Shown: positions 5,949 through 38,887 of the stretch, one piece after another | Layout of the letters: each line of letters begins with the position of its first letter | Numbering within the stretch: position 1 is the stretch's first letter | From: Obrimoposthia wandeli | Lineage: Eukaryota | Length of the DNA stretch: 64,000 nucleotides | Assembly: GCA_977020255.1 (NCBI GenBank) | Contig: CDROCS010004653.1 | Location: forward strand, 1-64,000 | Direction: 5' to 3' | The notes under the pieces: model-generated | What the model was told of the DNA's origin: nothing | Databases searched by the model: none | What the model saw: the letters and a program-made list of their open reading frames with translations, nothing else | Program-made: the position numbers and the translations under genes

Positions 5949-6011
5949 AGAACCCCCTAAAAAATATTTATTGTTAAGTAGCTAGAGTATCAATTTTTTA
6001 ACATATCTAAT

Positions 6012-21533: not shown

Positions 21534-21538
21534 AGCTC

Positions 21539-22315: not shown

Positions 22316-22387
22316 CTTATCTCAATTTTCGAGCTCTCATTATAATTCACTAGCGCCGCTTGCATTGTTGTCGGTTTGTTACTCTTT

Positions 22388-22454
22388 TGTAGTCAAATGT
22401 AACAGAGCGAGTAACGATCACTTAATAGTTACACATTGATACAAATCTTATACA
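22388..22454. promoter_or_regulatory. RstA-type TACA-N6-TACA boxes in the divergent promoter
   Basis: Minus strand TACATTTGACTACA at 22388-22401; plus strand TACA-CATTGA-TACA-AATCTTA-TACA at 22430-22454. Confidence 0.65.
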
Positions 22455-22546
22455 CATGAGCAACAGACGAAACAAAAATGATCCCTATACTTGCAACCAA
22501 GCATCGGGACTTACTCGTTGCACTGAAGACAACGAGCGTGTGACCT

Positions 22547-23149: not shown

Positions 23150-23178
23150 TCGTGGATCACCTATAGCGGAGTAAAATC

Positions 23179-23595: not shown

Positions 23596-23687
23596 TAGGA
23601 CAATGCCTTTTGAGAACTGAGCAGGTCATCATGGCCTAGTCATAAATTTTTCAATTATCTTAGCTGTACTTACCGAGACCAAAATAC

Positions 23688-24173: not shown

Positions 24174-24388
24174 CCAAAACATAGCAAGTAGCTGCATTTT
24201 GTAAAATGATTGATTACTCCTGGAAGCCGATCCCAGTAAAGGCACCGACCAAGCCGCCAATGTTTTTGCTGACTGATCCATTACTGCATCATTAACACGC
24301 AGCCGTTTCTATACATTTTAAAGATAAAAATGTGAGATGAGTAATAATTCTCTCCACTTGATAAACCTACATAAACACGAGGCTCCAC

Positions 24389-24862
24389 ATGAAAGTTCCA
24401 CTTAAACTAGCGATAACATTCTTAATTGTAATGATGACAGGCTGTCAAAGCTTACATTTTCTTCCTGAGAAAACACAACAGAAAATTCAAACACAAAATT
24501 TTCAATATCCTCATCAACCCTCTGCTAAAAAAGCGATGATTTATGTGGTTCGCCCTAATATTTACCTTGGTTTAGTACATTTCAATGTATATCTTGATAG
24601 CAAAGACGACACTGCTGAAATGGGTTATAACACCAGTAACGAATACATATATTTTGAAGTGGAGCCCGGTAGGCATACTATTTTTTCACATTCGTCAATT
24701 TGGTATGAAAAAGACATTCAAGTAAAAGCAGGAGAAATATTAGTGCTCGAGCAAAAACAAGGTGCCTTTGCAACACACCAACTGATCAGATTAAGTGAAA
24801 GCGCTGCTAAGTTTCGCATTATGAAAGCCTCGCAAGGGAAAATAATTAAAAAAAGTTTATAA
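24389..24862 (+). CDS. DUF2846-like lipoprotein
   Basis: Lipobox MTGC, AMIYVVRP and YIYFEVEPGRHTI patterns. Confidence 0.7.
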   Translation: MKVPLKLAITFLIVMMTGCQSLHFLPEKTQQKIQTQNFQYPHQPSAKKAMIYVVRPNIYLGLVHFNVYLDSKDDTAEMGYNTSNEYIYFEVEPGRHTIFSHSSIWYEKDIQVKAGEILVLEQKQGAFATHQLIRLSESAAKFRIMKASQGKIIKKSL

Positions 24863-25072
24863 TATGAGGCCTTCGGCATAACGTAGCGAACAATAATAAG
24901 ATAAGGTGGTCCCTTTAAAATAACTACTCTGCTCTATACTGGCAACTATACCGCCAGTTATATAGCCAGCTAAATCAGCTTCATTGTAACGAATGAATTA
25001 TGACCTTTATTCCTCATCATTTAAAGATAGCTAGGTTATATGAGAAGACATAAATAATTCGAGTTGGACAGT

Positions 25073-25904: not shown

Positions 25905-26831
25905 ATGACAAATAATATTTACATCACCATTGTTAATTACCCAAATGCACTGAAAAGTGCAGTGTATGGGCTAGAAGAGCTATTTATTTCTGCCAACACT
26001 ATCCTTGAAAATCATGCACTAGAGACCCGGTTCCAAGTAAACATTTGTACCCCTGAGCAGCTAGAAATGGCTAAAAATGCTCATATTGATTTAATCATTG
26101 TCCCTCCTATTATTAACGGGGACTACCACTTAAACCCTACCCTGCAGTTAATTAACTTCCTGACACAAGCACAGCGTAAAGGCGTTATTTTGTGCTCGGC
26201 TTGTGCTGGCGCTTTTATTCTGGCCGAAACAGGATTATTCGAAGGTAAAATGCTCAACACCCATTGGCAATTAGCCAACGATTTTCGAGAAAAATACCCC
26301 AAGGTGCGTTTGAATACAGATAAAATTTTAATCAATAGTATTGATGCTATTTCTGCAGGAGGGTTGATGTCATGGATAGATTTAGGCCTAGAAATTGTGT
26401 CGCGCTTTAGCAAACCTTTCGTCATGCGCTTACTAGGTAAGTTTCTAATTGTAGATACTGGCACACGTGAACAGCGCTACTACGAAAGCTTTAACCCAAG
26501 CTTTGCACATAACAACGATAAAATTGTCAAAGTACAGCACTATATTCAAGAGAACTATCAAACACGTATCACCATTAAAGATTTATCCGAACTGGCTTTT
26601 ATCACCGAACGTACTTTATTAAGGCAGTTCACACAAGCAACTGATTGGAAACCGCTGCAGTATATACAGCGTATTAGAGTACAAAAAGCCTGCGAAGCCC
26701 TTGAATCAACTACGCAAAGTTTAGAGCAGATAGCCTCCTTGGTTGGTTATAACGATGTGAATAGTTTTCGCAAAATATTCAATAAAGTAATTGGTTTGAG
26801 CCCGACTGAGTTCAGGCAACGCTTTCGTTAA
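25905..26831 (+). CDS. GlxA-type AraC regulator with DJ-1/PfpI domain
   Basis: SACAGAFILAETGL, THW, C-terminal double HTH; divergent from the hydrolase. Confidence 0.92.
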   Translation: MTNNIYITIVNYPNALKSAVYGLEELFISANTILENHALETRFQVNICTPEQLEMAKNAHIDLIIVPPIINGDYHLNPTLQLINFLTQAQRKGVILCSACAGAFILAETGLFEGKMLNTHWQLANDFREKYPKVRLNTDKILINSIDAISAGGLMSWIDLGLEIVSRFSKPFVMRLLGKFLIVDTGTREQRYYESFNPSFAHNNDKIVKVQHYIQENYQTRITIKDLSELAFITERTLLRQFTQATDWKPLQYIQRIRVQKACEALESTTQSLEQIASLVGYNDVNSFRKIFNKVIGLSPTEFRQRFR

Positions 26832-26859: not shown

Positions 26860-27741
26860 TTATAGTTTTATTTCCCACAAAACTCTTATTTCTTGCAGCA
26901 TCGCGCTGATAACAGGTTGATCCATTCTGTTTTTGGCAACCACAAAGTGTAGCGTTGTTGCAAAATCAAGTGTCGATATAACTTGCACCTGTTGCTTCTT
27001 TTCAGCTTCAAGCGCTTCTTCTAACTCTAAAAAGCTCAGCCCGAATCCACTTTTCACCAGTTCAAGTCGAGTACCATCATCACTTGTTTTCAGCACTGTT
27101 TTAATGGACTGTGCTAACACAGGAGATAACTGCTTTTTTAAAAAACCATCAAAAGGGCAATAATCTCCCATCATTATCCACTGCTGCTTACTTAACTGAA
27201 CTGTTGATAACATTGCGGACACATCAAAAGTTTGTGGAGCAACCGTTGTAATTTTTTGCTCCATCACTGCTAAACCAAAAAAATCATCTGGTATATCACC
27301 AAAGATATAACCACCATCAAGCTGCTGCTCTCTAATTTCACTGATGGTTTTACCCGTTGATTGCTGATGTACTTCTAAGCTGATTCCGGCACAGTTGTCT
27401 TGCAAGTTTTCTACTAATTTAGCCAGCCTTACTTGCTTAGCCGTTAAATTAATCGCCATGTGAAAGGTGCCGATAATTTCATGCAAATTATCAGCCGCTA
27501 GATTCACTAAGTCTACCGCGCTATCAAGTGTAAGCTGCGCTTGTTTTAGCAATAACGCACCTTTTTCTGTTAATAACATGCCTTTGCTTGAGCGTATAAA
27601 TAACGCAGTAGAAAGCTCTTCTTCAAGTGCTTTTATATGGGCACTAATCGCAGGAGGCGTGGTATATAAACGCTTTGCAGCTTGGGTTAAATTACCCGTT
27701 TTAGCAACCGCTACAAAAGAGCGTAAATGGTAAAACTCCAA
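26860..27741 (-). CDS. LysR-family regulator
   Basis: MEFYHLRSFVAVAKTGNLTQAAKRLYTTPPAISAHIKALEEEL HTH. Confidence 0.92.
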   Translation of the reverse strand: MEFYHLRSFVAVAKTGNLTQAAKRLYTTPPAISAHIKALEEELSTALFIRSSKGMLLTEKGALLLKQAQLTLDSAVDLVNLAADNLHEIIGTFHMAINLTAKQVRLAKLVENLQDNCAGISLEVHQQSTGKTISEIREQQLDGGYIFGDIPDDFFGLAVMEQKITTVAPQTFDVSAMLSTVQLSKQQWIMMGDYCPFDGFLKKQLSPVLAQSIKTVLKTSDDGTRLELVKSGFGLSFLELEEALEAEKKQQVQVISTLDFATTLHFVVAKNRMDQPVISAMLQEIRVLWEIKL

Positions 27742-28190: not shown

Positions 28191-28490
28191 ATGATTACTT
28201 GTTTTATCGAATATAAAATTGATACGCAACAGCTGCTAGAATTCGAAATTTACGCCAAAACTTGGGTTGGGTTAGTCAACAAATTAGGCGGGCAACACCA
28301 AGGATACTTTTTACCATCCGAAGGTGCGAACAATGTGGCACTAGCTCTATTTTCCTTTGCAAGCTTGGCCGATTACGAGCAGTACAGAATAGCTTCTTTT
28401 AAAGATCCACAGTGTATCGAAGCTTTTGAATATGCAGCTAAAACACAGTGTATTAAGAGCTATCGGCGTAGTTTTTTCCGACCATTATGA
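28191..28490 (+). CDS. NIPSNAP family protein
   Basis: MITCFIEYKID, GYFLPSEGANNVALALFSFASLADYEQYR pattern. Confidence 0.85.
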   Translation: MITCFIEYKIDTQQLLEFEIYAKTWVGLVNKLGGQHQGYFLPSEGANNVALALFSFASLADYEQYRIASFKDPQCIEAFEYAAKTQCIKSYRRSFFRPL

Positions 28491-28704: not shown

Positions 28705-29931
28705 ATGAAAGTCGTCGCCTGTAATACCTACGTTGTCGCCACCCCACCTCCGCATGTTGGCGGTATGTATTGGATTTTTGTCAGCATCAGAACTGATTGT
28801 GGAATAGAGGGTATTGGTGAAGTGTACGCCGCCTCTTTTCATCCTAGTGTAATGGAGCTTGCGATTAGCGATGTGTTTGATCGATACTTAAAAAACCATG
28901 ACCCGCACTTAATAGAACGCTTTTATCGCGAAGCTTATTCCAGTGGGTTTACCCAACGACCTGATTTAAGCATGATGGGCGTTATCAGTGGTTTAGAAAT
29001 GGCGTGCTGGGACATTATCGGTAAAGCAGCGAATAAACCGGTTTATCAATTAATTGGCGGAAAAGTGCATGAAAAGCTGCGTTGCTACACTTACCTTTAT
29101 CCAGAAAACAAACAAGGTGAGTATGATTATGACAACGTAGAGTTAGCAGTAGAGTGTGCTATTAAAAATATGGAGCTGGGCTTTACTGCCCTTAAATTTG
29201 ACCCTGCTGGACCTTATAGTGCTTATTCAGGACAACAAATCTCTTTAGAGGCACTCGAAAAATCCGCCACCTTTTGCCAGCGTATTAGGGAAGCAGTCGG
29301 CAATAAATGTGATTTATTATTCGGCACACATGGGCAAATGACACCAGCATCGGCTATTCGCTTAGCAAAACGTTTAGAGCCTTTTGATCCTTTATGGCTT
29401 GAAGAGCCTGTGCCTCCTGGCCAATCAGAGGCGATGGCGCGGGTGGCTGGAAAAACCAGTATTCCAGTGGCAACCGGGGAGCGCCTTACCACTAAGTATG
29501 AGTTTCATGATGTGCTCAAAAATGGCGCAGCCTCTATTTTACAAATGAACCTTGGCCGTGTGGGCGGCATTTTAGAAGCCAAGAAAATAGCCGCCATCGC
29601 TGAAGTATATTACGCACAAATAGCACCGCATTTGTATAACGGGCCCGTTGGCGCTGCGGCGAGTATTCATCTGGCAACCGCCACACCTAACTTCTTAATT
29701 CAAGAGAGCATCATGACGTGGGGGGGCTTTCATGCAGAAGTACTGCAAGAAAAAATACAATGGCAAGATGGTTATATTATACCTTCTGACAAACCAGGTC
29801 TTGGCATCGAATTAAACATGGAGGTGGTAAAGTCGCAATCGCCGTATAAAGGGAAAGCACTGCATCTTTCTATGGATAGCAAACCTTATGACGTTAAAGA
29901 AAATTCATCTACACAGTGGAAAAACTCTTGA
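28705..29931 (+). CDS. Mandelate racemase/enolase-superfamily enzyme, substrate unknown
   Basis: GIGEVY, MACWDIIGK..KPVYQLIGG, KFDPAG, GTHG, WLEEP, TGERL, APH and PGLGIEL motifs. Confidence 0.9.
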   Translation: MKVVACNTYVVATPPPHVGGMYWIFVSIRTDCGIEGIGEVYAASFHPSVMELAISDVFDRYLKNHDPHLIERFYREAYSSGFTQRPDLSMMGVISGLEMACWDIIGKAANKPVYQLIGGKVHEKLRCYTYLYPENKQGEYDYDNVELAVECAIKNMELGFTALKFDPAGPYSAYSGQQISLEALEKSATFCQRIREAVGNKCDLLFGTHGQMTPASAIRLAKRLEPFDPLWLEEPVPPGQSEAMARVAGKTSIPVATGERLTTKYEFHDVLKNGAASILQMNLGRVGGILEAKKIAAIAEVYYAQIAPHLYNGPVGAAASIHLATATPNFLIQESIMTWGGFHAEVLQEKIQWQDGYIIPSDKPGLGIELNMEVVKSQSPYKGKALHLSMDSKPYDVKENSSTQWKNS

Positions 29932-29992
29932 AGCAAGCAGGTAAGTTCTTAAGGGAAAGAGGCAAGCTCTTAAGGGAAGGCTCAAACTCAAC

Positions 29993-31648
29993 ATGAAATA
30001 TGATTTTATTATTATCGGTGCAGGATCCGCCGGTTGCATTCTGGCTGATAGGTTAACGCAATCCGGTAAGTATTCAGTGTTAATTTTAGAAGCTGGCGGC
30101 AAAGATAACAGCCCTTGGATTAAGCTACCGGTAGGTTTCGGCAAAACCTACTACAACCCTCAGTATAATTATATGTATTACAGCGAGCCCGAAAAAGAGC
30201 TAGCTAATCGTAAGTTGTACGCACCTAGAGGGAAGGTTCAAGGTGGCTCAGGTTCTATTAACGCGATGATTTACGTGCGCGGCCAAGCGGCTGATTTTGA
30301 TGGCTGGGCTGCTGCAGGTAACGAGGGATGGTCATACGCTGAAGTATTACCTTTCTTTAAAAAGCTAGAGCGGCACCCCGCTGGAAATACTGCGTTTCAC
30401 GCCGCTGATGGAAAAATGACCATCACTGCGATGCATGATAAAGCGCATAGCCTGTGTCAGCATTATCTACAAGGGGCTGAAGAATCAGGGTTTGAAATCA
30501 ACCACGACTTCAATGGCCAGCATTTTGCGGGAGCGGGTATTTATGAAATTAATGTTCGCAACGGTCAGCGCGATTCTAGTAACACCGCCTACTTAAAACC
30601 CGCATTAAAAAGAAGTAATTTAACTATTTATAGAAATACCGTAGCTGAAAAAATAATTTTTGCAGAAAGCTCTCTTGAATCTAGCGTTTCTCAAGATAAC
30701 CCTTATATAATAAAAAACGCAACAAGTGTACAAATCAGACGTAAAGGCGCACTTGAGATTGTTAGTGCAAACAAAGAAATACTTATAGCCGCCGGTGCCG
30801 TCGATTCACCAAAACTGCTGCAGTTATCGGGTATTGCTGATAGAGCATTATTGGCAAAACACAGTATAGATCAGGTTCAGCACGCACCGGCTGTAGGTCA
30901 AAACCTGCAGGATCACTTATGTGTTAGTTATTATTACCGTGCTAATATCAAAACCCTCAATGACGATTTAGGCTCATTGTTCGGCCAGGCGAAAGCCGGA
31001 TTACAATATGCGATTAATCGCTCGGGCCCCTTATCAATCAGTGTTAATCAGGCAGGTGGGTTTTTTAAAGGCGCAGATGATGAAGCGCAGGCAAACATCC
31101 AACTCTACTTTAATCCCATGTCTTATCAAATACCTAAAGATCCCAAAGCTCAGCTAAAGCCTGATCCTTACTCAGGCTTTCTAGTCGGTTTTAATTCGTG
31201 CAAGCCTACCAGCAAAGGCAGTATTGAACTTAGCTGCGCTGATCCTGCTACCCCGGCATTGATAAAGCCTAACTACTTATCGACAGATAAAGATATTCAA
31301 GAAGTGATACAAGGCAATAAACTGATTCGAAAATTAATGGCATCAACGGCGCTAAAAGCGATTACTGACCAGGAGATAGCACCAGCCGAAGCGGTGACCG
31401 ATGAAGCTTCAATGCTGCAATATTTTCGTGAAAATGCCGGTTCTATCTTCCATTTATGTGGATCTTGCAAGATGGGACCTAACCCAGAGGACAGCGTAGT
31501 GGATAATCGTTTACGTGTCTATGGCGTGAATAGCTTACGAGTGGTCGATGCATCAATCTTCCCAACCATCACCTCTGGCAACATTAATGCGCCGGTAATG
31601 ATGGTCGCTGAAAAAGGCGCGCAGATGATATTAGAAGATAACGCTTGA
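29993..31648 (+). CDS. GMC-family FAD oxidoreductase (choline dehydrogenase-like)
   Basis: GAGSAG, RGKVQGGSGSINAMIYVRG, GQNLQDH, FHLCGSC and GNINAPVMMVAEK motifs. Confidence 0.93.
   Translation: MKYDFIIIGAGSAGCILADRLTQSGKYSVLILEAGGKDNSPWIKLPVGFGKTYYNPQYNYMYYSEPEKELANRKLYAPRGKVQGGSGSINAMIYVRGQAADFDGWAAAGNEGWSYAEVLPFFKKLERHPAGNTAFHAADGKMTITAMHDKAHSLCQHYLQGAEESGFEINHDFNGQHFAGAGIYEINVRNGQRDSSNTAYLKPALKRSNLTIYRNTVAEKIIFAESSLESSVSQDNPYIIKNATSVQIRRKGALEIVSANKEILIAAGAVDSPKLLQLSGIADRALLAKHSIDQVQHAPAVGQNLQDHLCVSYYYRANIKTLNDDLGSLFGQAKAGLQYAINRSGPLSISVNQAGGFFKGADDEAQANIQLYFNPMSYQIPKDPKAQLKPDPYSGFLVGFNSCKPTSKGSIELSCADPATPALIKPNYLSTDKDIQEVIQGNKLIRKLMASTALKAITDQEIAPAEAVTDEASMLQYFRENAGSIFHLCGSCKMGPNPEDSVVDNRLRVYGVNSLRVVDASIFPTITSGNINAPVMMVAEKGAQMILEDNA
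31579..31639 (+). repeat. 61-bp direct repeat, copy 1 (3' end of the GMC gene)
   Basis: CAACATTAATGCGCCGGTAATGATGGTCGCTGAAAAAGGCGCGCAGATGATATTAGAAGAT; 56/61 identical to 33927-33987. Confidence 0.92.
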
Positions 31649-31941
31649 TCACTACGCATAATCCTAAATTCGGCAGTTGAATCACGAAAGTAAGCACAAT
31701 CTCTTGATGCACCTAGAAAACCAGAAAATATTTTCATCACCAATAAGGTGACCACAAAATTTTTTTCCTATGCACACCAATATCTTGCACTTCTTTTCCG
31801 CACTCAATCGCCGAATCTAGGATAATAATCGATGAGGCTAATCCTAAATTGAGCCATTGAATTTAAGGATTATCCGCAACTGCTTATTCATTAAATCATC
31901 TCCTGCTCAGCTATCTAAGCAATACCCCAACCTCTAATAAC

Positions 31942-32841
31942 TTAAATTTTAAGTGTATTAAAGGTGGGTGGTTTTATCTTGCTGAAAATAATTACATTCC
32001 CCGCGATCACTAAACATAAACCGCATAGTGCCATAGAAGACCAAGTGTAATCCTCATAAACAGAGGAGATACTCAAGGCTATAACAGGGAATAAAACAGT
32101 AGAGTAAGCCGCCGCATCTGAGCCAATTCTGCTTACTAGCATTAGATAGGCGGTAAAACCAATCACAGTACCGGGAATTGCCAAATACAACAGAGATACC
32201 AAATAGCTAACATCTTCAACGATAGTGAATTCTACCCCAGTGAACAAACTAATAATTAACAATATAGTGGTACCATAAAACATGCCCCATGCATTTGTGG
32301 TCGGTGGTTTTAAGCCCCGCTTGTGATGCCTTACCGTCAACATATTACCTAGTGAGAAACAATAAGTGCCTGTCACTGCTAGCCCTATACCAACCAGCAA
32401 TTGCTGAAAACTGCTTTGCTGTTGTAATTCAGGCCAAAACAACACACTGATACCTAACAAGCCGATAGTCGCGCCTGCAATTGTTCGCATGTTAGGTTTT
32501 TTTGAGAAGAATACCCACGAATTCCCGATATTTAGAATCGTCGCTAGTGAAAATATGATCGAAACAAGCCCGCTAGATATATAACCTGTCGCTAGATAAA
32601 AGCAGTAAAAGTTTAAGCTAAATAAACAGCCTCCCTGTAAAAAGCAGTAAAAATGATCCCGCTTGGTTAATTGCTGACGTTTATCAAGCAAATGTAACAG
32701 TAAGAACATGACGACAGCGGCTATCGTAAATCGATAAATAATAGATGCTTCAATGGCAACGGCTCCTAACTGGAGCTTTATCGCTATCCAAGTGGTCCCC
32801 CAAATAATGACCGTCAAGGCGTATAAAAATAGGTTAAGCAT
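31942..32841 (-). CDS. DMT/EamA-family transporter
   Basis: 10 TMs, IWGTTWIAIK and GTVIGFTAYLMLVSRIG motifs; probable start 32841 (ORF track 32895). Confidence 0.92.
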   Translation of the reverse strand: MLNLFLYALTVIIWGTTWIAIKLQLGAVAIEASIIYRFTIAAVVMFLLLHLLDKRQQLTKRDHFYCFLQGGCLFSLNFYCFYLATGYISSGLVSIIFSLATILNIGNSWVFFSKKPNMRTIAGATIGLLGISVLFWPELQQQSSFQQLLVGIGLAVTGTYCFSLGNMLTVRHHKRGLKPPTTNAWGMFYGTTILLIISLFTGVEFTIVEDVSYLVSLLYLAIPGTVIGFTAYLMLVSRIGSDAAAYSTVLFPVIALSISSVYEDYTWSSMALCGLCLVIAGNVIIFSKIKPPTFNTLKI

Positions 32842-33053
32842 AATATGGTTTATTCCGTGGTTAATGTAAGCCATATTATGGCAACTTAACCGCACTAGCT
32901 CTGGTAAATACTTGCGCAGTTAGAACGCGAAGAATTAGTTTTTGGTAGATTCTTGCGGTTTTGTTAGTGTTACAGGTGGCCTGCTCGCCTGGGTTTGATT
33001 AACATAGCCCAATCGATTCAGCATTATTAGCACATCATTCAATTGGACAATCA

Positions 33054-33935
33054 ATGCAGCCAACGCCAATAGATTCTCATGATTATTTAGTGTTCCAGCA
33101 ACTAAATGCTTCTAGAGCAAATCTTGAACAAGCCGCCTATTTAGGTGCTGTGTCGACTGCTGTCTGGTCAAATGCAGAAGATTTTGTACAGTATCGCAGC
33201 CCAAAACATCACACGCTTAGCTGCTATTTAGCTGGTGGTTACGATATTAGCCGTCGCCGAGAAGGACTGCGTCTAACAGGTGGTGCCCCTGGAAAAGTGT
33301 GTGTGATGCCTCAAGGGCATGAATCCACTTGGCATGTCTCTGGCTATTTAAGATTCTTTCATTTGTATTTTGATCAAGAAAACCTAGTAAATTTGGCAGC
33401 GCAAATCTGGGATACTGATTATAGAGTACAAATGCCAGATCTGACTTTTGAAAAAATTGCTTGGATAGATGCCTTGTGCCGCAATGTCATCATGCCACTT
33501 GATTGGTCATCACCGGCTGATCGTCTGAATTTAAGTAGTGCCACTGATATGCTGATGATTCACTTATTGCAACACTACGCCCAACAAAACAGTTTACCTC
33601 ATGTTGTCGGCGGACTAGCACCTTATATCAAACGCCAGGTCGTTGAGTATATGCACGAACATTTAGAGCAAGGGGTTAGCCTTGATGAGCTGGCAAAATT
33701 AGCAAACTTAAGCACTTATCACTTCTCTCGCATGTTTAAATACTCATTGGGTGAGCCACCACATCGCTATATGACAGAATTGAGATTACAAAAAGCGCGG
33801 CAATTAATTCTGCAAAGTAATGTTTCATTAAAAAATGTAGCAGCACAGCTAGGTTTTAATGACCAAAGCCACCTGGGGAAAAAATTTAAACAGCGTTTTG
33901 GCGCTAGTCCTGCACAAGCACGCCGTCAACATTAA
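33054..33935 (+). CDS. AraC-family regulator
   Basis: HHTLSCYLAGG cupin-like N-terminus, LANLSTYHFSRMFK and FNDQSHL HTH; divergent from EamA. Confidence 0.93.
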   Translation: MQPTPIDSHDYLVFQQLNASRANLEQAAYLGAVSTAVWSNAEDFVQYRSPKHHTLSCYLAGGYDISRRREGLRLTGGAPGKVCVMPQGHESTWHVSGYLRFFHLYFDQENLVNLAAQIWDTDYRVQMPDLTFEKIAWIDALCRNVIMPLDWSSPADRLNLSSATDMLMIHLLQHYAQQNSLPHVVGGLAPYIKRQVVEYMHEHLEQGVSLDELAKLANLSTYHFSRMFKYSLGEPPHRYMTELRLQKARQLILQSNVSLKNVAAQLGFNDQSHLGKKFKQRFGASPAQARRQH

Positions 33936-33987
33936 TGCGCCGGTAATGATAGCCACTGAAAAAGGTGTGCAGATGATATTAGAAGAT
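33927..33987 (+). repeat. 61-bp direct repeat, copy 2 (orphan GMC 3' end)
   Basis: Reads NINAPVMIATEKGVQMILED followed by YQ*; contains the AraC stop codon. Confidence 0.92.
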
Positions 33988-34263
33988 TATCAATAAGCCT
34001 TTCATGCTAGAGATAATATTACAGAGCTGCTTTTACCTCAGTTTTGTGACTACTTGGCGCAGTGCTTTTGATTGAATAACTGTTACCTCAGGATCTTTTA
34101 CTTCAAAATCACCCCTTCTGGGCTTAGCTTTTTCTTAGCTTATCTCTAAACCCTTCAAAATCAGCAGATACCAATGAGATTGATTCAGGTATACTGCTCG
34201 ATCACGTGCTGTACTGAATAAAAGTTCTTAAAAATCACTATCGTAAAGGTAAATAAATCACAG

Positions 34264-35079
34264 ATGGATGTTAACAATTTGGTACAGCATAAATTGCCGA
34301 TTCAAAGTACTGATAATCGTGCCAAAAAACTAACCATTGGTTTGATTGGCTATGGCAGTTTTGGGGCTTTTTTACATCAATTAGCACAGCGCTTTGTGGC
34401 AGATGCACAAGTCAAAGTATTTTCCGATCAGCACACCCTTGATAATCAAACGTTCTTTGCTTCAGATGAGGTAATCAATTGCGATATAGTCGTGCTCGCT
34501 GTACCTATTAGCGCCTATCGTGACGTATTGACCGCTATCATCCCTAAAATGCGCACACAAAGTGTTTTAGTCGATGTGGCAACAGTCAAAGATCACACTA
34601 TGCAGGTAATCAAAAGTCTATCACCTGCATGTAGCTATATTTCTCTACACCCGATGTTTGGCCCAGAGAGTTATCGCAAGCGTGGTGGCGATCTATCCGG
34701 CTTATGTGTAGTGATGACAGGCCATACTTTAAGCCAACCACAGTATTCGCTATTTAGTCACTTTATCGAACATACTGGGTTACGCTTAGTTGAAAAAACA
34801 GCTCAAGAGCATGACCAAGAATTAGCAGAAACGCTGTTTTTAACCCACTTTATTGGCCAAATAATATCCAAAGGCAATTTCAAACGCACCGAGATAGACA
34901 CCTTATCTTTTGCCTATCTGATGGACTCAGTTGACTCTGTTAAACATGATGATCAGTTATTTAAAGATGTTTGCCGTTTTAATCCTTACTGTTTAGAAGT
35001 GATGCAAAGATTTGATGAAAGTGATCGATTTGTGCGCAACACCATGTTGGGCTTAGAGAGCACTGATGCTATTAAATAA
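34264..35079 (+). CDS. Monofunctional prephenate/arogenate dehydrogenase (TyrA family)
   Basis: GLIGYGSFG, DVATVK, LHPMFGPES and EHD motifs; no chorismate mutase domain. Confidence 0.85.
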   Translation: MDVNNLVQHKLPIQSTDNRAKKLTIGLIGYGSFGAFLHQLAQRFVADAQVKVFSDQHTLDNQTFFASDEVINCDIVVLAVPISAYRDVLTAIIPKMRTQSVLVDVATVKDHTMQVIKSLSPACSYISLHPMFGPESYRKRGGDLSGLCVVMTGHTLSQPQYSLFSHFIEHTGLRLVEKTAQEHDQELAETLFLTHFIGQIISKGNFKRTEIDTLSFAYLMDSVDSVKHDDQLFKDVCRFNPYCLEVMQRFDESDRFVRNTMLGLESTDAIK

Positions 35080-35201
35080 TCATCGCAGCGCTATCTTTTG
35101 ATTTTGCTAAAAGATGGCGCCCATTTAGCAGGATAGCCTCCACTTAAAATGACAGCTTTCTTTTAAAAAAAATCGCGACAAATGTCCTTTAGAATAGCGT
35201 T

Positions 35202-36644
35202 TTATCCTGAAATAACCGCCTTAGTTTCAATATATTCATGCATACCTTGCTCACCCCACTCGCGACCATTTCCCGATTGTTTGTAGCCGCCAAAAGGGGC
35301 ATGTAAAGAAAAGTATCCACCTTGGATGTAACATTGCCCCGCTCTTAAATGCTTGGCTATTTTTAAGGCGCTGGCTTTATCTTTTGCATACACACCTGAT
35401 GACAAACCGTAGTCAGAATCATTGGCTATTTCAATCGCCTGCTCAATGGTTTGATAAGTCATAATACATAGCACTGGGCCGAATATTTCTTCGCGGGCGA
35501 TACGCATATCGTTAGTCACATCGGCAAAAATAGTTGGCTGTATGTAAGTGCCGTTAGTTAAGTCAGCAGGTTGCTTACCGCCAGTAACAAGTAATGCACC
35601 TTCTTGTAAACCTAAATCAATATAACTTAATACTGTCTCTAACTGGCGCTGTGACGCTATCGGGCCCATGGTTGTTTGTGGACTTAGCGGATCTCCTACT
35701 ACTTGCTCTAATGCATACTGCTCAGCCAAAATGAGTGTGCGCGCATATAAATTTTGCGGAATAAGCAAACGTGTTAACGCGTTGCAGGTTTGACCGGTAT
35801 TAGCCATCACATCTTCTACCGCATAGCGAACAGCCGCGGCTAAATCGGCATCTTGGGTAATAATTAAAGCAGATTTTCCGCCTAGTTCTTGGCACACTCG
35901 CTTCACACCGGAAGCAGCGTTTTTAGCCACATCAATGCCCGCCGCAGTAGAACCCGTAAATGAAACCATATCGACTAACGAATGGCTGCTAAGTAGCGGG
36001 CCAATACTTTTACCGGTACCCGTGACTAAATTAAACACACCGGCAGGGAAGCCTATTTTATGTAATATTTCAGCCAGAATGAAATCTTGTAGCGGTGTTT
36101 GCTCAGCAGGTTTAGTAACAATAGTGCAACCTGCTGCAAGGGCTGGCGCTAACTTACCACTGAGTTGATGCAGTGGATAATTCCAAGGATTAATAAACGC
36201 ACAAACCCCAACCGCTTCTTTGAAAATGCTGACATTATCTTGCTCTTCTACCGCTTCCATCGTGTGCGCCAGCTTTGCGTAGTAGCGCATTGCATCAATC
36301 GCTGCATCCACATGAAACGCCCCAGCTAGGTGCTGTGGACAACCCATAGCAACAGTATGTGCCAACACTAAATCATCGTATCGAACCAGCATTTCATCAG
36401 CTATTTTTTCTAACCATGCTGCGCGGGTCGCCGCTGACGTCGTCGACCAACTTTTAAAAGCGCCTTTAGCTGCTAATACCGCCGCTTCAACATCCTGCGC
36501 ATTCGCATCAGGGAAGCTAGCAAAAACTTCTTGTGTCGCGGGGTTAACAGCTTCTAATCTTTGCTCGCTGTGTGGCGTTTGCCATTGCCCATCAATATAT
36601 AAATGCGCAAAGTGAGTAGTGGATAAGTGCATAGAATCTCGCAA
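35202..36644 (-). CDS. NAD-dependent aldehyde dehydrogenase
   Basis: PWNYP, FTGSTAAG, ELGGKS, GQTCNA, EEIFGPV and FGGYKQSGNGRE motifs; probable start 36632. Confidence 0.95.
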   Translation of the reverse strand: MRDSMHLSTTHFAHLYIDGQWQTPHSEQRLEAVNPATQEVFASFPDANAQDVEAAVLAAKGAFKSWSTTSAATRAAWLEKIADEMLVRYDDLVLAHTVAMGCPQHLAGAFHVDAAIDAMRYYAKLAHTMEAVEEQDNVSIFKEAVGVCAFINPWNYPLHQLSGKLAPALAAGCTIVTKPAEQTPLQDFILAEILHKIGFPAGVFNLVTGTGKSIGPLLSSHSLVDMVSFTGSTAAGIDVAKNAASGVKRVCQELGGKSALIITQDADLAAAVRYAVEDVMANTGQTCNALTRLLIPQNLYARTLILAEQYALEQVVGDPLSPQTTMGPIASQRQLETVLSYIDLGLQEGALLVTGGKQPADLTNGTYIQPTIFADVTNDMRIAREEIFGPVLCIMTYQTIEQAIEIANDSDYGLSSGVYAKDKASALKIAKHLRAGQCYIQGGYFSLHAPFGGYKQSGNGREWGEQGMHEYIETKAVISG

Positions 36645-36695
36645 GTGAATTTCCTTTATGTTGAACGGTTAATTGAATCTATATCGAATGTCTCG

Positions 36696-36778
36696 CAACT
36701 CGCAATTTCTAGCTTCTAGTTTCTCTGTAGCTTCTCCCTACCTTCTATCTACCTTCTATCTACCTTCTCTCTAGCTTT
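36696..36778. repeat. Degenerate short tandem repeat, pyrimidine-rich on the + strand
   Basis: TTTCTAG CTTCTAG ... CTTCTATCTAC CTTCTATCTAC CTTCTCTCTAG in the intergenic gap. Confidence 0.55.
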
Positions 36779-36781
36779 ATT

Positions 36782-37774
36782 TTAGCCCTTTGGAATAACT
36801 TCATAGCCCGGCTCTTCAGGTTCATCATCTACCATTTGTGCAGGAAAACCGTCAGCTAGCACTTGTACATCACACGCATCTTCCAAGCGTCTAATTATAT
36901 TTGGTGACCACTCCCTAGCTCCGTAACGTGCTTGCCCATCTTTGAAAATATCGAGGATTAAAGGAGAAAGCTCTAAAGGAACGGCTAAGTCTTTAGCCAG
37001 TGAATCGAAAAGACCCACATCTTTGATAACAAGGTCCATAGTAAAACTGATATCACGGCTGCCGTTTAGAATCACTTGTGACTCGGTTTCATGCACAAAT
37101 GAGTTTCCTGAGGAAATACGAATTGCTTCATAAGTGGTATTCAAATCCATACCCGCTTTCTTCGCGACGGTTAAAGCTTCAGCAAGTGAGCAAAGATTGG
37201 CGGTTGCTAAATAATTAGTGAGTACTTTAAGCACAGAGGCAGACCCCAGCGCACCTGTGTGTAAAACACGTCTGCCCAGAGTTGTTAGCAGGGGTAATAC
37301 CTGATCAAAAACAGCGCGCTCACCACCTGCAAAAATAGCAATATTACCGGTATCTGCACGATGGCAACCGCCCGATACAGGTGTTTCTAGGGCACAAGCT
37401 CCTGTGCTTTCAACAAGTTTAGCCAGCCGTTTAATTTCTGACTCATCTGTAGTGCTCATTTCTAACCATATTTTGCCTTCGCTAAGCCCTGCAATAACAC
37501 CCTCTGGGCCTTGCATCACTTGGGCACAAATGCTCGGGGATGGTAGACAAGTGAAAACCAAATCAACACCTTGAGCCAGCGCTTTAGGTGTATCAGCCCA
37601 TGATGCGCCTTTATCTAGAAACGGCTGTGCAACACTCTTATCTAAATCTAGCACTGTTAAATCGTAGCCGTTGCGCAATAAGCTGCCCGCCAGTTTTGCG
37701 CCTACATTACCCAAACCAATAAAACCTACTTTCATAGCAAAATACTCATCGTTGTAATTAATTGTTTTACGCAC
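36782..37774 (-). CDS. Beta-hydroxyacid dehydrogenase family (NAD(P)-dependent) oxidoreductase
   Basis: GFIGLGNVG, EMSTT, PVSGG and KVLTNYL motifs; probable start 37735. Confidence 0.9.
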   Translation of the reverse strand: MRKTINYNDEYFAMKVGFIGLGNVGAKLAGSLLRNGYDLTVLDLDKSVAQPFLDKGASWADTPKALAQGVDLVFTCLPSPSICAQVMQGPEGVIAGLSEGKIWLEMSTTDESEIKRLAKLVESTGACALETPVSGGCHRADTGNIAIFAGGERAVFDQVLPLLTTLGRRVLHTGALGSASVLKVLTNYLATANLCSLAEALTVAKKAGMDLNTTYEAIRISSGNSFVHETESQVILNGSRDISFTMDLVIKDVGLFDSLAKDLAVPLELSPLILDIFKDGQARYGAREWSPNIIRRLEDACDVQVLADGFPAQMVDDEPEEPGYEVIPKG

Positions 37775-37829
37775 TTAAAATGCTGATGCTTTGGCTAAAA
37801 GATTAAGGATTGACTAGCCTAAAAACAAT

Positions 37830-37863
37830 TCAATTTTTTTTGATGATCGGTAAAAAAAATTGA
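37830..37863. promoter_or_regulatory. Perfect 12-bp inverted repeat, candidate LysR site
   Basis: TCAATTTTTTTT-N10-AAAAAAAATTGA between the divergent dehydrogenase and LysR genes. Confidence 0.5.
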
Positions 37864-37945
37864 TTTCTATTTAGCTGTTAAAAGAGTAGTTTTGCACAAT
37901 CAATCTATGGTTAATTATGTTGTTTAATAACTGTGTTTAATAATT

Positions 37946-38887
37946 ATGTCAAATGAGCATTCAAGTAAGATCAATTTATATTCCCTACCGCCTTTAAAAT
38001 CACTTAAAGGCTTTGAAGCCGCGGCGCGTTTGCTGAGTATTCGCGGTGCCGCTCAAGAGCTAAACCTCACCCATCCTGCGGTTACTCACCAAATACAAAT
38101 ATTGGAAAGCAGCCTCAACGTAAAACTCTTTAGCAAACAAGGCAGAAACATAGTGCTCACCGCTGAAGGGGAAACGTTTTACCCTTATGTCCGCCAAGCA
38201 ATTGAAACGCTGATTAGTGGCACACAAGCCTTGAGTAGAGCGGTGTTATCTAGACCGTTGCGCATCCAAGTATATGTCACTACCTCGATACGCTGGTTAG
38301 CGCCGCGTTTGGCAGACTTTCGGGCTAAATTTCCTGAAATCAATCTACAACTGATGACTTGTAATCTGGGCTGGGAGTTTGATGCAGATAACGCTGATAT
38401 AGGTTTGATTTTTAAAAACCAGCCACTAAAACCACAGTACCACTGGTGTAAATTGTTCGACTCTCAATTATTTCCTGTCTGCAGCCCACAACTGATCAAA
38501 AATCAGCAAGAATTAAACGCCGCTGACTTACTCAATTATCCCCTCATTACTGTCTATACTGAAGGCTGGAGCTGGCAACAATGGTTTAAAGAGTTTTGTA
38601 ATCCAGCCAACATGGAACAGCAACTAAATGCGCATAAATCGATCGTGATCGACACTTTAGCAGTCGCCCTTGAAATGGCCATAAAAGGAGAGGGAATAGC
38701 GCTAGTAAATGGGCCCTCAGCGGATGATGATTTACACTCTGGCCGCTTGATTAAGCCTGTGGATAATGTGGTATCGGGCTTAGGAGAATGGGGCGTTATT
38801 TGTCATAACGATATTAAAGATGACAAGCGAGTGGTGCTATTTATCCAATGGCTCAAAGCAGAAGCGGCCAAACGAAATGAGTGCTAA
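37946..38887 (+). CDS. LysR regulator, GcvA-like
   Basis: LPPLKSLKGFEAAARLLS, RWLAPRLADF and LFPVCSP motifs. Confidence 0.93.
   Translation: MSNEHSSKINLYSLPPLKSLKGFEAAARLLSIRGAAQELNLTHPAVTHQIQILESSLNVKLFSKQGRNIVLTAEGETFYPYVRQAIETLISGTQALSRAVLSRPLRIQVYVTTSIRWLAPRLADFRAKFPEINLQLMTCNLGWEFDADNADIGLIFKNQPLKPQYHWCKLFDSQLFPVCSPQLIKNQQELNAADLLNYPLITVYTEGWSWQQWFKEFCNPANMEQQLNAHKSIVIDTLAVALEMAIKGEGIALVNGPSADDDLHSGRLIKPVDNVVSGLGEWGVICHNDIKDDKRVVLFIQWLKAEAAKRNEC

What the first reader, a model, noticed from the sequence alone, without database searches (positions are those of the whole stretch)
28705..38887. Uncharacterised catabolic module built around an atypical enolase-superfamily enzyme
Seen: an enolase-superfamily gene and a GMC oxidoreductase are co-oriented, and converge on an ALDH plus a beta-hydroxyacid dehydrogenase that sit divergent from a GcvA-like LysR with a perfect 12-bp inverted repeat (37830-37863). 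The enolase-like protein departs from the mandelate racemase subgroup: KxK reads KFD, the first metal-ligand position reads GTHG (galactonate dehydratase has DFHG), and the His-Asp dyad partner region reads QMNL; EEP, GER and APH are kept. Known: GMC plus ALDH pairs oxidise an alcohol to an acid (choline to betaine being the model), and GcvA-like LysRs often control amino-compound catabolism. Inference: a pathway for an unidentified, probably nitrogenous, marine osmolyte or hydroxy-acid, with non-standard enolase-superfamily chemistry. It abuts the polyamine locus but has no transporter of its own.
Basis: partly seen in the sequence, partly recalled or inferred. Interest (0 to 1): 0.72.

Follow-up and report, generated by a model that had tools for sequence, protein, structure and literature searches.

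The report
Orphan enolase-family catabolic gene module
A marine bacterium's contig carries a widespread but functionally unassigned enzyme set, built around an enolase-superfamily protein with a rewired active site, that keeps turning up beside genes for breaking down DMSP and betaine-type osmolytes.

Summary
The genes, the atypical residues and the 12-bp inverted repeat are all present as described. EamA and AraC are a 2.3-kb insertion that a 90%-identical sister contig lacks.

The enolase-like protein is about 80% identical to PDB 4E4U and belongs to a huge family with five solved structures and no assigned function. All 153 members checked, down to about 50% identity, keep K164-F-D166, G207-T-H209-G, E233, E259 and H309. 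None has the usual first metal-ligand Asp or the dyad Asp.

The four enzyme families recur together in unrelated gamma- and alphaproteobacteria. In 401 gammaproteobacterial genomes the enolase-like and HIBADH-like genes co-occur in 14 (chance about 1). The usual core operon is AldA-like ALDH, MFS, enolase-like, GMC; this strain lacks the first two.

Neighbours elsewhere include DddD and BCCT in a DMSP-degrading Marinobacterium, OpuAC transporters, MttB, TMAO demethylase and PurU.

My best reading is inferred, not shown. The enolase-like enzyme performs beta-elimination or hydration on a small carboxylate derived from DMSP or a betaine. The alcohol and aldehyde dehydrogenases then oxidise the product. 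The substrate is unknown.

The parts
28191..28490 (+). Small NIPSNAP-family ORF (99 aa) in the 960-bp 'gap' upstream of the enolase-like gene. Its membership of the module is uncertain.
   Evidence: Pfam NIPSNAP 56 bits. Sequence read. No remnant of the ALDH474, MFS or IclR genes lies in this gap.
28705..29931 (+). Enolase-superfamily protein (408 aa) of the orphan K-F-D / G-T-H-G family. Predicted alpha-proton-abstracting beta-eliminase or hydratase.
   Evidence: MR_MLE_N and MR_MLE_C. Below every NCBIfam cut-off; best is DgoD at 254 of 311 bits. PDB 4E4U E=1e-207. Residue mapping. Family invariance.
29993..31648 (+). GMC flavoprotein oxidoreductase (551 aa), 61 bp downstream of the enolase-like gene. 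Predicted dehydrogenase for an activated primary alcohol. Its last codons were remodelled by the insertion.
   Evidence: GMC_oxred_N and GMC_oxred_C. BetA equivalog 438 of 732 bits. Adjacent to the enolase-like gene in about 75 of 84 loci. A separate orthogroup (60% identity) from Halomonas DddA (38%).
31641..33926 (.). About 2.3-kb inserted cassette: EamA transporter 31942-32895(-) and AraC-type regulator 33054-33935(+). It is flanked by an imperfect ~62-bp direct repeat of the GMC 3' end (31579-31640 and 33927-33988).
   Evidence: Absent from sister contig C1004, which is otherwise collinear. Repeat aligned. GMC tail fragment detected at 33937-33987. Pfam.
34264..35079 (+). PDH_N-like NAD-binding protein (271 aa) of unknown role. 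Lineage-specific.
   Evidence: Pfam PDH_N 54 bits. No NCBIfam hit at E<=1e-30. Present in C1004 but in none of 84 other loci.
35202..36644 (-). Aldehyde dehydrogenase (480 aa, 'ALDH480'). Best family similarity is to betaine-aldehyde dehydrogenase, below the cut-off.
   Evidence: Aldedh 520 bits. BADH 440 of 669 bits. 60% identical to the Halomonas ALDH that follows the HIBADH-like gene. Orthologues of 42-47% lie next to the enolase-like gene in G027 and two Rhodobacterales.
36782..37738 (-). Beta-hydroxyacid dehydrogenase (HIBADH family, 318 aa from the ATG at 37738) with a conserved acidic C-terminal extension.
   Evidence: NAD_binding_2 and NAD_binding_11. Below the HIBADH, GarR and LtnD cut-offs. 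72% identical to the Halomonas orthologue. Co-occurs with the enolase-like family in 14 of 401 genomes, p=4e-17.
37830..37863 (.). Perfect 12-bp inverted repeat with a 10-nt spacer in the divergent promoter region. Candidate LysR operator.
   Evidence: Function not tested. One mismatch in the sister contig.
37946..38887 (+). GcvA-like LysR regulator, divergent from the HIBADH-ALDH pair.
   Evidence: HTH_1 and LysR_substrate. GcvA subfamily 234 of 288 bits. 52% identical to the Halomonas LysR in the same triad. 48% orthologue in the G027 cluster.

Best explanation
The locus is a real, recurrent catabolic module whose substrate is unknown.

Shown:
- An orphan enolase-superfamily enzyme and its dedicated GMC flavoprotein form a two-gene unit.
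- A LysR-controlled pair, HIBADH-like dehydrogenase plus ALDH, is its recurrent accessory.
- This strain's copy is a reduced version. It lacks the AldA-like ALDH, the MFS transporter and the IclR regulator of the canonical operon.
- An EamA-AraC insertion at the GMC 3' end interrupts it.

Inferred mechanism:
- The enolase-like enzyme keeps the DgoD-type base (H309), acid (H209), two Glu metal ligands and K164.
- It has Gly in place of the first metal-ligand Asp and carries an invariant Asp166 on the neighbouring strand.
- I propose that it abstracts the alpha-proton of a small carboxylate lacking the usual 2-hydroxyl. It would then eliminate a beta-substituent, or run the reverse reaction and hydrate an acrylate-type enoate.
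- The resulting or preceding primary alcohol, of the 3-hydroxypropionate or 2-(hydroxymethyl)-acid type, would be oxidised to the semialdehyde by the GMC enzyme and/or the HIBADH-like enzyme.
- The ALDH would then oxidise the semialdehyde to the acid.

The most likely source of the substrate is catabolism of DMSP or a betaine-type osmolyte. Acrylate and 3-hydroxypropionate are the leading concrete candidates.
For: Module reality:
- The enolase-like and GMC genes are adjacent in about 75 of 84 loci across Pseudomonas, Burkholderiaceae, Chromobacterium, Halomonas, Marinobacterium, Photobacterium, Psychrobacter and Rhodobacterales.
- The full four-enzyme set occurs in Halomonas, in gammaproteobacterium G027 and in two Rhodobacterales genomes.
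- Partial sets occur in G357, a PS1-clade alphaproteobacterium, Janthinobacterium and a Glaciecola-like contig.
- At genome level the enolase-like and HIBADH-like genes co-occur in 14 genomes, out of 18 and 22 carriers among 401 (p=4e-17, not corrected for phylogeny).

Chemistry:
- Catalytic His209 and His309, E233, E259, K164, D166 and G207 are invariant in 121 close and 32 distant members.
- An alcohol dehydrogenase of some type lies directly beside the gene almost everywhere: GMC, HIBADH-like, or Zn-ADH in 15 of 20 Rhodobacterales loci.
- GMC enzymes are genetically shown 3-hydroxypropionate dehydrogenases (PMC7940609; PMC12632250). The first paper also cites a HIBADH-family enzyme acting on 3HP in Pseudomonas denitrificans.
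- The closest solved relative of the HIBADH-like protein is 2-(hydroxymethyl)glutarate dehydrogenase.

Osmolyte link:
- In Marinobacterium profundum the operon lies directly beside a DddD-like gene and two BCCT transporters. PMC9327192 lists a Marinobacterium profundum isolate (MC13-7) as growing on DMSP, and for its reference strain PAMC 27536 (the genome of L005) lists dddD and dddP but no acuN or acuK.
- OpuAC ABC systems flank the operon in Burkholderia and Collimonas.
- MttB lies next to the HIBADH-like gene in Aestuariispira and next to the enolase-like gene in one Rhodobacterales genome.
- TMAO demethylase, a BHMT-like gene and PurU are adjacent in three gammaproteobacteria.
- The HIBADH-like gene is present in 4 of 5 DddD-positive genomes of the sample (p=3e-5).
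Against: - No experiment, annotation or paper assigns a substrate.
- The ACS-type MFS of the canonical operon suggests an anionic substrate, not a zwitterionic one.
- ALDH474 passes the AldA (lactaldehyde/glycolaldehyde) model. That fits 2-hydroxy-aldehydes better than malonate semialdehyde.
- All the linked ALDHs are of non-acylating types. Known 3HP routes use the CoA-acylating DddC.
- The module's GMC is not the DddA orthologue.
- The Rhodobacterales copies sit beside pcaD and pcaB, and an oceanic clade's copy follows sulfate-assimilation genes. The contexts are therefore heterogeneous.
- The window itself carries no DMSP or betaine catabolic gene next to the module.
- The co-occurrence statistics ignore phylogenetic relatedness.
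- The role of D166 as a substitute metal ligand is untested.
Confidence: 0.42

Rival explanations
1. A non-nitrogenous hydroxy-acid or acid-sugar route. The enolase-like enzyme would be an ordinary 2,3-dihydroxy-acid dehydratase acting on, for example, a tetronate, pentonate or glycerate. The terminal CH2OH of the substrate or of the 2-keto-3-deoxy product would then be oxidised by the GMC or HIBADH-like enzyme and the ALDH to a dicarboxylate such as oxaloacetate or 4-hydroxy-2-oxoglutarate.
For: - The closest characterised families are galactonate, gluconate and mannonate dehydratases, and the DgoD acid/base His pair is kept.
- The MFS partners resemble D-galactonate-type anion symporters.
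- ALDH474 is AldA-like and also resembles alpha-ketoglutarate semialdehyde and glyceraldehyde dehydrogenases.
- The HIBADH-like protein resembles tartronate-semialdehyde reductase and L-threonate dehydrogenase.
- The IclR regulator resembles KdgR and BhcR.
Against: - Every known acid-sugar dehydratase of the superfamily keeps the first Asp ligand, which helps chelate the 2-OH and carboxylate. This family never has it.
- No kinase, aldolase or second dehydratase typical of such routes is linked.
- No sugar or lactonase genes are nearby.
- Recurrent neighbours are betaine, C1 or DMSP genes instead.
Confidence: 0.22
2. The enolase-like enzyme is itself an onium lyase. It would abstract the proton alpha to a carboxylate and expel trimethylamine or dimethylsulfide from the beta-carbon. 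Candidate substrates are DMSP, beta-alanine betaine, or an oxidised betaine-lipid head group such as aspartate betaine. The GMC, HIBADH-like and ALDH enzymes would prepare or consume the carbon skeleton.
For: - Methylaspartate ammonia-lyase is an enolase-superfamily C-N lyase (established knowledge).
- TMAO demethylase lies directly upstream of the gene in G070, a BHMT-like gene in G268 and MttB in one Rhodobacterales genome.
- OpuAC and BCCT transporters are nearby.
- ALDH480 and ALDH509 resemble BADH and PuuC, the amino- or onium-aldehyde dehydrogenases.
- An aspartase-like lyase is linked in Loktanella and Psychrobacter.
Against: - The MFS partner suggests an anionic substrate.
- M. profundum already has DddD and DddP.
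- No aromatic-cage evidence could be obtained.
- All evidence is contextual.
Confidence: 0.15
3. A sulfonate route. 2,3-Dihydroxypropanesulfonate would be oxidised by the GMC or HIBADH-like enzyme to sulfolactaldehyde and by the ALDH to sulfolactate. The enolase-like enzyme would then eliminate sulfite to give pyruvate.
For: - The chemistry fits every enzyme. The AldA-like ALDH suits a 2-hydroxy-aldehyde.
- The HIBADH family contains sulfolactaldehyde reductase.
- The transporter is of an anion MFS type.
- Invariant R85 could bind a second anionic group.
- An abundant oceanic clade has the gene right after PAPS-reductase, CysNC and CysQ genes.
Against: - No sulfite exporter or sulfite dehydrogenase lies in any neighbourhood seen.
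- No paper links sulfolactate and this family.
- The cys-gene adjacency is a single lineage.
Confidence: 0.07
4. In this window the two halves are merely neighbours. The enolase-like/GMC pair and the LysR/HIBADH/ALDH triad would serve unrelated pathways.
For: - About 3.5 kb and three genes separate them, and they have different regulators.
- Most Pseudomonas and Burkholderia genomes have the first unit without the second.
- In several genomes the two are hundreds of kb apart.
Against: - They are tightly clustered, in varied gene orders, in at least seven unrelated lineages.
- Genome-level co-occurrence is 14 observed against about 1 expected.
- In the sister contig only about 2.2 kb and one gene separate them.
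Confidence: 0.08

Closest known systems
Structural-genomics entries 4E4U, 4E5T, 3T4W, 3RCY, 4J3Z ('mandelate racemase/muconate lactonizing enzyme' of unknown function)
   Same: Same family. 4E4U aligns over residues 1-400 at E=1e-207. The printed alignments for 4E4U, 4E5T and 3T4W show the K-F-D and G-T-H-G motifs.
   Different: None in kind. The depositors give no function, and no paper in the searchable library cites these entries.
E. coli D-galactonate dehydratase DgoD (mandelate racemase subgroup of the enolase superfamily)
   Same: Two-domain fold at 36% identity. Conserved are His185 (acid), His285 (base), both Glu metal ligands, the Glu after strand 8 and the Lys at the end of strand 2.
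   Different: The first metal ligand Asp183 is Gly. The dyad Asp258 is Asn or Ala. A new invariant Asp166 stands where DgoD has Asn. The score is below the DgoD cut-off (254 of 311 bits). There is no dgoK or dgoA partner.
ddd/acu 3-hydroxypropionate module of DMSP degraders (DddA GMC dehydrogenase, DddC aldehyde dehydrogenase, LysR regulator, BCCT DddT, DddD)
   Same: The composition matches: a GMC flavoprotein, an ALDH and a LysR. In M. profundum the operon physically abuts DddD and BCCT genes. The GMC precedent for oxidising a beta-hydroxy acid is genetic.
   Different: The GMC is a paralogue (38%) of Halomonas DddA, not its orthologue. The ALDHs are non-acylating types rather than the MMSDH-type DddC. 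An enolase-like enzyme is not part of any described ddd or acu cluster.
BetA/BetB choline-to-glycine-betaine oxidation
   Same: A GMC plus ALDH pair oxidising an activated primary alcohol to an acid. A GcvA-like LysR and betaine-type transporters occur nearby in some genomes.
   Different: Both enzymes score below the BetA and BADH equivalog cut-offs (438 of 732 bits and 440 of 669 bits). Choline oxidation needs no enolase-type enzyme.
3-Hydroxyisobutyrate / tartronate-semialdehyde / 2-(hydroxymethyl)glutarate dehydrogenases (HIBADH family)
   Same: Same fold and cofactor domains. The best solved relative is 2-(hydroxymethyl)glutarate dehydrogenase, E=4e-47.
   Different: The score is below every equivalog cut-off. 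It has a conserved acidic C-terminal extension. It forms its own highly conserved orthogroup, 64-87% identical across classes.

Membership tests
Enolase superfamily | N-terminal capping domain plus C-terminal modified TIM-barrel domain | tested here: met
   MR_MLE_N 47 bits and MR_MLE_C 207 bits. Full-length match to solved members.
Enolase superfamily | Three carboxylate metal ligands at the ends of barrel strands 3, 4 and 5 | tested here: not met
   The first position is Gly207 in all 153 sequences examined. The second (E233) and third (E259) are kept. Whether D166 substitutes is not testable here.
Mandelate racemase subgroup | KxK motif at the end of strand 2 | tested here: not met
   It reads K164-F-D166, invariant across the family.
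Mandelate racemase subgroup | His-Asp dyad (strand 7 His, strand 6 Asp) | tested here: not met
   His309 is kept. The Asp position is Asn in the close clade and Ala or Asn in the distant clade, never Asp.
D-galactonate dehydratase (DgoD, NF010624) | Score above the curated equivalog cut-off, and the general-acid His two residues after the first ligand | tested here: not met
   254 bits against a cut-off of 311. The His (H209) is present.
Choline dehydrogenase BetA (TIGR01810) | Equivalog cut-off | tested here: not met
   438 bits against 732, and subfamily PRK02106 525 against 605. The GMC N and C domains are present.
DddA / Gmor 3-hydroxypropionate dehydrogenase | Orthology to the GMC gene located within a dddC-dddA-dddT-dddD cluster | tested here: not met
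   In Halomonas G001 the GMC beside dddC, dddT and dddD is only 38% identical to the window's GMC. The copy linked to the enolase-like gene is 60% identical.
Betaine-aldehyde dehydrogenase (TIGR01804), tested for ALDH480 | Equivalog cut-off | tested here: not met
   440 bits against 669.
3-Hydroxyisobutyrate dehydrogenase MmsB (TIGR01692) and tartronate semialdehyde reductase (NF008592) | Equivalog cut-offs | tested here: not met
   151 bits against 292, and 183 against 397.
GcvA subfamily LysR (NF008352) | Subfamily cut-off | tested here: not met
   234 bits against 288. It is GcvA-like, not GcvA.
Canonical ALDH474-MFS-enolase-like-GMC operon (defined here) | AldA-like ALDH and MFS genes directly upstream of the enolase-like gene, with an IclR or LysR regulator nearby | tested here: not met
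   The window and its sister contig have only the enolase-like and GMC genes. No ALDH474, MFS or IclR gene or remnant is in the window. The rest of this bacterium's genome cannot be delimited, because the assembly holds many organisms.

The most novel reading that the evidence does not exclude
The K-F-D / G-T-H-G family is a new mechanistic subgroup of the enolase superfamily with a relocated metal ligand. It would act on carboxylates that lack a 2-hydroxyl. It would be either a CoA-independent acrylate hydratase (3-hydroxypropionate dehydratase) or a new DMS- or TMA-releasing lyase. That would add an unrecognised, near-core step in DMSP and betaine carbon flow in roseobacters and Oceanospirillales.
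Probability: 0.2. Interest if true: 0.85.

Novelty: new variant of a known kind. Interest (0 to 1): 0.62.

Why it matters
- The family is very large. One search returned 8000 or more relatives.
- It is highly conserved, at 72-90% identity across three proteobacterial classes.
- It occurs in 247 of 301 sampled Rhodobacterales genomes.
- Five crystal structures exist, yet no function is attached to them.
- Its active site breaks two rules used to define the mandelate racemase subgroup.
- Assigning its substrate would name a widely distributed marine and soil pathway.
- It would explain how an enolase-type barrel works without the first metal ligand.
- If the DMSP, acrylate or betaine link holds, it would fill a gap in models of osmolyte carbon and sulfur cycling.
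- The comparative data here give concrete strains (Marinobacterium profundum, Halomonas, Pseudomonas, roseobacters) and candidate substrates to test.

Tried and rejected
- Literature: seven searches aimed at an assigned function found nothing relevant. They covered the PDB codes, enolase/GMC/IclR/ALDH combinations, sulfolactate plus mandelate racemase, and enolase superfamily plus trimethylamine plus betaine (one search was a syntax error).
- The ESM Atlas gave only generic names such as 'Isomerase'.
- NCBIfam: every enzyme of the window is below all equivalog cut-offs.
- Remnants of the missing ALDH474, MFS and IclR genes were sought in the window's intergenic regions. None was found.
- The 'own genome' search is uninformative about this bacterium. 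G000 is a 1.35-Gb, 6912-contig multi-organism assembly.
- Orthology of the GMC to DddA was tested and rejected.
- The idea that ALDH509 is a CoA-acylating MMSDH was rejected. It is PuuC/BADH-like.
- The promoter and terminator scan was not above shuffled expectation and gave no operon boundaries.
- Structure prediction was not run. A homologue of about 80% identity is already solved, and the tools return no coordinates, so the D166-to-metal distance could not be measured.
- My naive ORF clustering in high-GC loci produced antisense artefacts. Called genes from the look-up of encoding contigs were used instead.

Full report
**What is in the window**

ORF listing and Pfam/NCBIfam scans give the following map.

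| Coordinates | Strand | Gene |
|---|---|---|
| 25905-26831 | + | DJ-1+AraC regulator |
| 26860-27741 | - | LysR |
| 28191-28490 | + | NIPSNAP ORF, 99 aa |
| 28705-29931 | + | enolase-superfamily protein, 408 aa |
| 29993-31648 | + | GMC oxidoreductase, 551 aa |
| 31942-32895 | - | EamA transporter |
| 33054-33935 | + | AraC regulator |
| 34264-35079 | + | PDH_N-like protein |
| 35202-36644 | - | ALDH, 480 aa |
| 36782-37738 | - | HIBADH-family dehydrogenase |
| 37946-38887 | + | GcvA-like LysR |
| 38905 onward | - | DAO oxidase, class-III aminotransferase, GS-like and GntR genes (a polyamine-type set) |

The perfect 12-bp inverted repeat at 37830-37863 is real. Only three sites in the 64-kb window carry such a repeat. 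It consists largely of T8/A8 runs. The sister contig has one uncompensated mismatch in it, in a region that is 91% identical overall. It is a plausible but unproven operator.

**Provenance**

The 'genome' is a 1.35-Gb assembly of 6912 contigs holding many bacteria. The closest named relative of the HIBADH-like protein, at 97% identity, comes from an Oceanospirillaceae MAG.

The assembly contains a sister contig, C1004, at about 90% nucleotide identity. Its enolase-like protein is 98% identical to the window's. It also contains a third, unrelated copy on contig C546.

C1004 is collinear with the window from the enolase-like gene to the DAO gene but lacks window 31641-33926, which carries EamA and AraC. 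In the window this segment is bracketed by an imperfect ~62-bp direct repeat of the GMC 3' end. The distal copy preserves the ancestral stop region. This confirms the earlier scan note s1-211209. The cassette is an insertion, and the ancestral arrangement was enolase-like, GMC, PDH_N-like, then ALDH and HIBADH on the minus strand, then LysR.

**The enolase-like protein**

It scores below every NCBIfam cut-off. The best is DgoD at 254 of 311 bits. It matches PDB 4E4U at E=1e-207 over residues 1-400, and it also matches 4E5T, 3T4W, 3RCY and 4J3Z. All five are structural-genomics entries named only 'mandelate racemase/muconate lactonizing enzyme'.

Alignment with E. coli DgoD maps the catalytic positions as follows.

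| DgoD residue | Role | Window protein |
|---|---|---|
| D183 | first metal ligand | G207 |
| H185 | general acid | H209 |
| E209, E235 | metal ligands | E233, E259 |
| D258 | dyad partner | N282 |
| H285 | base | H309 |
| E310 | Glu after strand 8 | E334 |
| 'KLN' | end of strand 2 | K164-F-D166 |

The functional roles of the DgoD residues are from established knowledge of that enzyme, not tested here.

In 121 sequences of at least 74% identity these residues are invariant. In 32 sequences of 50-60% identity from Rhodobacterales and other lineages the same set is invariant. The exception is position 282, which is Asn or Ala and never Asp. The unusual site is thus a conserved family trait, not decay. 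Whether D166 replaces the missing ligand cannot be measured with the tools available.

**Distribution**

The word-based protein search saturated at 8000 hits. Identities run at 74-98% across Gamma-, Beta- and Alphaproteobacteria, and names are only generic. The family was found in 18 of 401 sampled Gammaproteobacteria and in 247 of 301 sampled Rhodobacterales.

**Genomic context**

*Canonical operon.* In 84 loci the recurrent operon is ALDH (474 aa), MFS, enolase-like, GMC, with an IclR or LysR regulator.
- The ALDH passes the curated AldA-type model NF007497 (519 bits, cut-off 500).
- The MFS weakly resembles organic-anion symporters.
- The window and C1004 lack the ALDH474, MFS and IclR genes, and no remnants are present.

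*The accessory triad.* The LysR, HIBADH-like and ALDH480 genes of the window have clear orthologues immediately downstream of the operon in Halomonas (52%, 72% and 60% identity). The four enzyme families recur as follows.

| Genome | Arrangement |
|---|---|
| Gammaproteobacterium G027 | one 8-kb cluster with an MFS and PurU |
| Two Rhodobacterales genomes | HIBADH, then ALDH480-enolase-like-GMC, then LysR |
| G357 | HIBADH-GMC-enolase-like operon |
| PS1-clade alphaproteobacterium | GMC-enolase-like-HIBADH |
| Janthinobacterium | partial set |
| Glaciecola-like contig | partial set |

*Genome-level co-occurrence.* In the 401-genome sample the HIBADH-like gene occurs in 22 genomes and the enolase-like family in 18. 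Both occur in 14. Fisher p=4e-17, not corrected for phylogeny. Pseudomonas and Salipiger genomes that have the canonical operon lack the HIBADH-like gene. The module is real, with a core pair and an accessory triad.

**Hints to the substrate**

An alcohol dehydrogenase is almost always the direct neighbour of the enolase-like gene. It is a GMC enzyme, an HIBADH-like enzyme, or, in 15 of 20 Rhodobacterales loci, a class-III-like Zn-ADH.

Neighbours pointing to methylated osmolytes recur in independent lineages.
- In Marinobacterium profundum PAMC 27536 the order is Fe-ADH, BCCT, an 837-aa two-domain CoA-transferase of the DddD type, IclR, the operon, then a second BCCT. PMC9327192 lists a Marinobacterium profundum isolate (MC13-7) as growing on DMSP, and for its reference strain PAMC 27536 (the genome of L005) lists dddD, dddP, dddA, dddB, dddC and dddT but no acuN or acuK.
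- OpuAC-type ABC systems flank the operon in Burkholderia and Collimonas. Collimonas also has a formaldehyde-activating enzyme there.
- TMAO demethylase lies directly upstream of the gene in G070 (1189 bits, cut-off 1100). A BHMT-like methyltransferase does so in G268, and PurU abuts the G027 cluster.
- An MttB-family gene follows the HIBADH-like gene in Aestuariispira and neighbours the enolase-like gene in one Rhodobacterales genome.
- In Pseudomonas benzenivorans the LysR-HIBADH-ALDH509 unit has OpuAC beside it and a DddD-like gene 9.5 kb away.
- In the 401-genome sample, 4 of 5 DddD-positive genomes carry the HIBADH-like gene (p=3e-5). Two of 5 carry the enolase-like family (p=0.018).

Published genetics show that GMC enzymes oxidise 3-hydroxypropionate in Halomonas bluephagenesis (PMC7940609) and in Cereibacter sphaeroides (PMC12632250). 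The first paper also cites a HIBADH-family enzyme with that role in Pseudomonas denitrificans.

However, the Halomonas GMC that sits inside the dddC-dddA-dddT-dddD cluster is only 38% identical to the window's GMC. The operon-linked copy is 60% identical. The module's GMC is therefore a paralogue of DddA, not DddA itself.

**Counter-signals**
- The ACS-like MFS suggests an anionic substrate.
- The AldA-like ALDH fits 2-hydroxy-aldehydes.
- All linked ALDHs are non-acylating types.
- Many Rhodobacterales copies follow pcaD, an alpha/beta-hydrolase gene and pcaB.
- An abundant oceanic clade has the gene alone after PAPS-reductase, CysNC and CysQ genes.
- Pseudomonas, Burkholderia and Collimonas also carry a nearby unit of aldo-keto reductase, SSADH-like ALDH and MFS.
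- The context is therefore suggestive, not decisive.

**Interpretation**

Shown:
- A conserved module exists.
- Its active site is atypical in a family-wide way.
- This strain carries a reduced and interrupted copy.

Inferred:
- The retained His base, His acid, two Glu ligands and Lys argue for classic alpha-proton abstraction with beta-elimination.
- The loss of the Asp that normally helps chelate the substrate's 2-hydroxyl and carboxylate, plus a new invariant Asp on the neighbouring strand, suggests a substrate without a 2-hydroxyl.
- The constant pairing with dehydrogenases for activated primary alcohols, and with ALDHs, suggests a beta-hydroxy-acid to semialdehyde to acid sequence.
- The leading concrete model is acrylate-type enoate to 3-hydroxy-acid hydration, or elimination of a beta-substituent, feeding the GMC, HIBADH-like and ALDH enzymes in DMSP or betaine catabolism.

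Alternatives not excluded are an acid-sugar-type dehydratase route, a direct onium lyase, a DHPS/sulfolactate route, and mere adjacency of two unrelated units.

**Verdict**

The locus belongs to a large, structurally known but functionally orphan enzyme family, set in a recurrent and undescribed gene module. It is a new variant within a known superfamily. It is worth experimental follow-up, and specific organisms and substrates are now nameable.

The scan had already noted the EamA-AraC insertion on this same stretch (s1-211209).

Noticed in passing
window 31579-31640 and 33927-33988: An EamA-AraC cassette of about 2.3 kb was inserted into the last codons of the GMC gene, with a ~62-bp imperfect duplication. 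The distal copy keeps the ancestral stop region seen in the sister contig.
   Followed up: yes
window 19805-24865 versus G000:C1004:61766-66890: In the sister contig this 5-kb block lies between the upstream LysR region and the enolase-like gene, not before it. About 50 bp (window 28438-28487) is shared at the junction. This is a block transposition between close relatives.
   Followed up: partly
G000:C1004:77109-77437; window 3583-3739, 6011-6165, 6256-6407, 7545-7713, 14698-14869: Two tandem copies of a ~155-bp repeat lie between the DAO and aminotransferase genes in the sister contig but not in the window. The repeat probably belongs to the hairpin/MITE family noted elsewhere in this scan. 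Five copies occur elsewhere in the window.
   Followed up: no
window 28191-28490 (+): A small NIPSNAP-family ORF (99 aa) lies in what looked like a 960-bp empty gap upstream of the enolase-like gene.
   Followed up: partly
window 34264-35079 (+): A PDH_N-like NAD-binding protein with no NCBIfam match. It is conserved between the window and the sister contig but absent from 84 other loci of the family.
   Followed up: partly
G000 as a whole (C4653, C1004, C546, C5599, C5168, C506, C1089, C3321): The assembly totals 1.35 Gb in 6912 contigs and holds many bacteria. It contains three copies of the enolase-like gene (100%, 98% and 83% identity) and seven DddD-like genes on other contigs. It looks like a host-plus-microbiome assembly rich in DMSP-degrading Oceanospirillales.
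   Followed up: partly
L101 and L102 (Tara/ENA marine contigs), gene at 9001-10212: An abundant oceanic clade (cluster of 190 sequences) has the enolase-like gene alone, with no GMC gene. It lies directly after PAPS-reductase-like, CysNC and CysQ genes.
   Followed up: no
L135-L147 (Rhodobacterales loci): In many Rhodobacterales the order is pcaD-like lactonase, an alpha/beta-hydrolase, pcaB-like cycloisomerase, an optional MFS, a class-III-like Zn-ADH, then the enolase-like gene. The family is present in 247 of 301 sampled genomes of the order.
   Followed up: partly
L106-L108 and L103: A second recurrent unit lies a few kb from the operon in Pseudomonas, Burkholderia and Collimonas: aldo-keto reductase, SSADH-like ALDH, sugar-porter-type MFS and LysR. 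Loktanella has an AKR, a BADH-like ALDH and an aspartase-like lyase instead, and Psychrobacter has a Lyase_1 gene and an ALDH there.
   Followed up: partly
window 25905-26831 (+): A DJ-1/PfpI+AraC regulator, with the architecture of GbdR-type regulators, lies 2 kb upstream of the module. Similar regulators lie within a few kb of the operon in Pseudomonas and Collimonas. This may be coincidence, since the family is very common.
   Followed up: no
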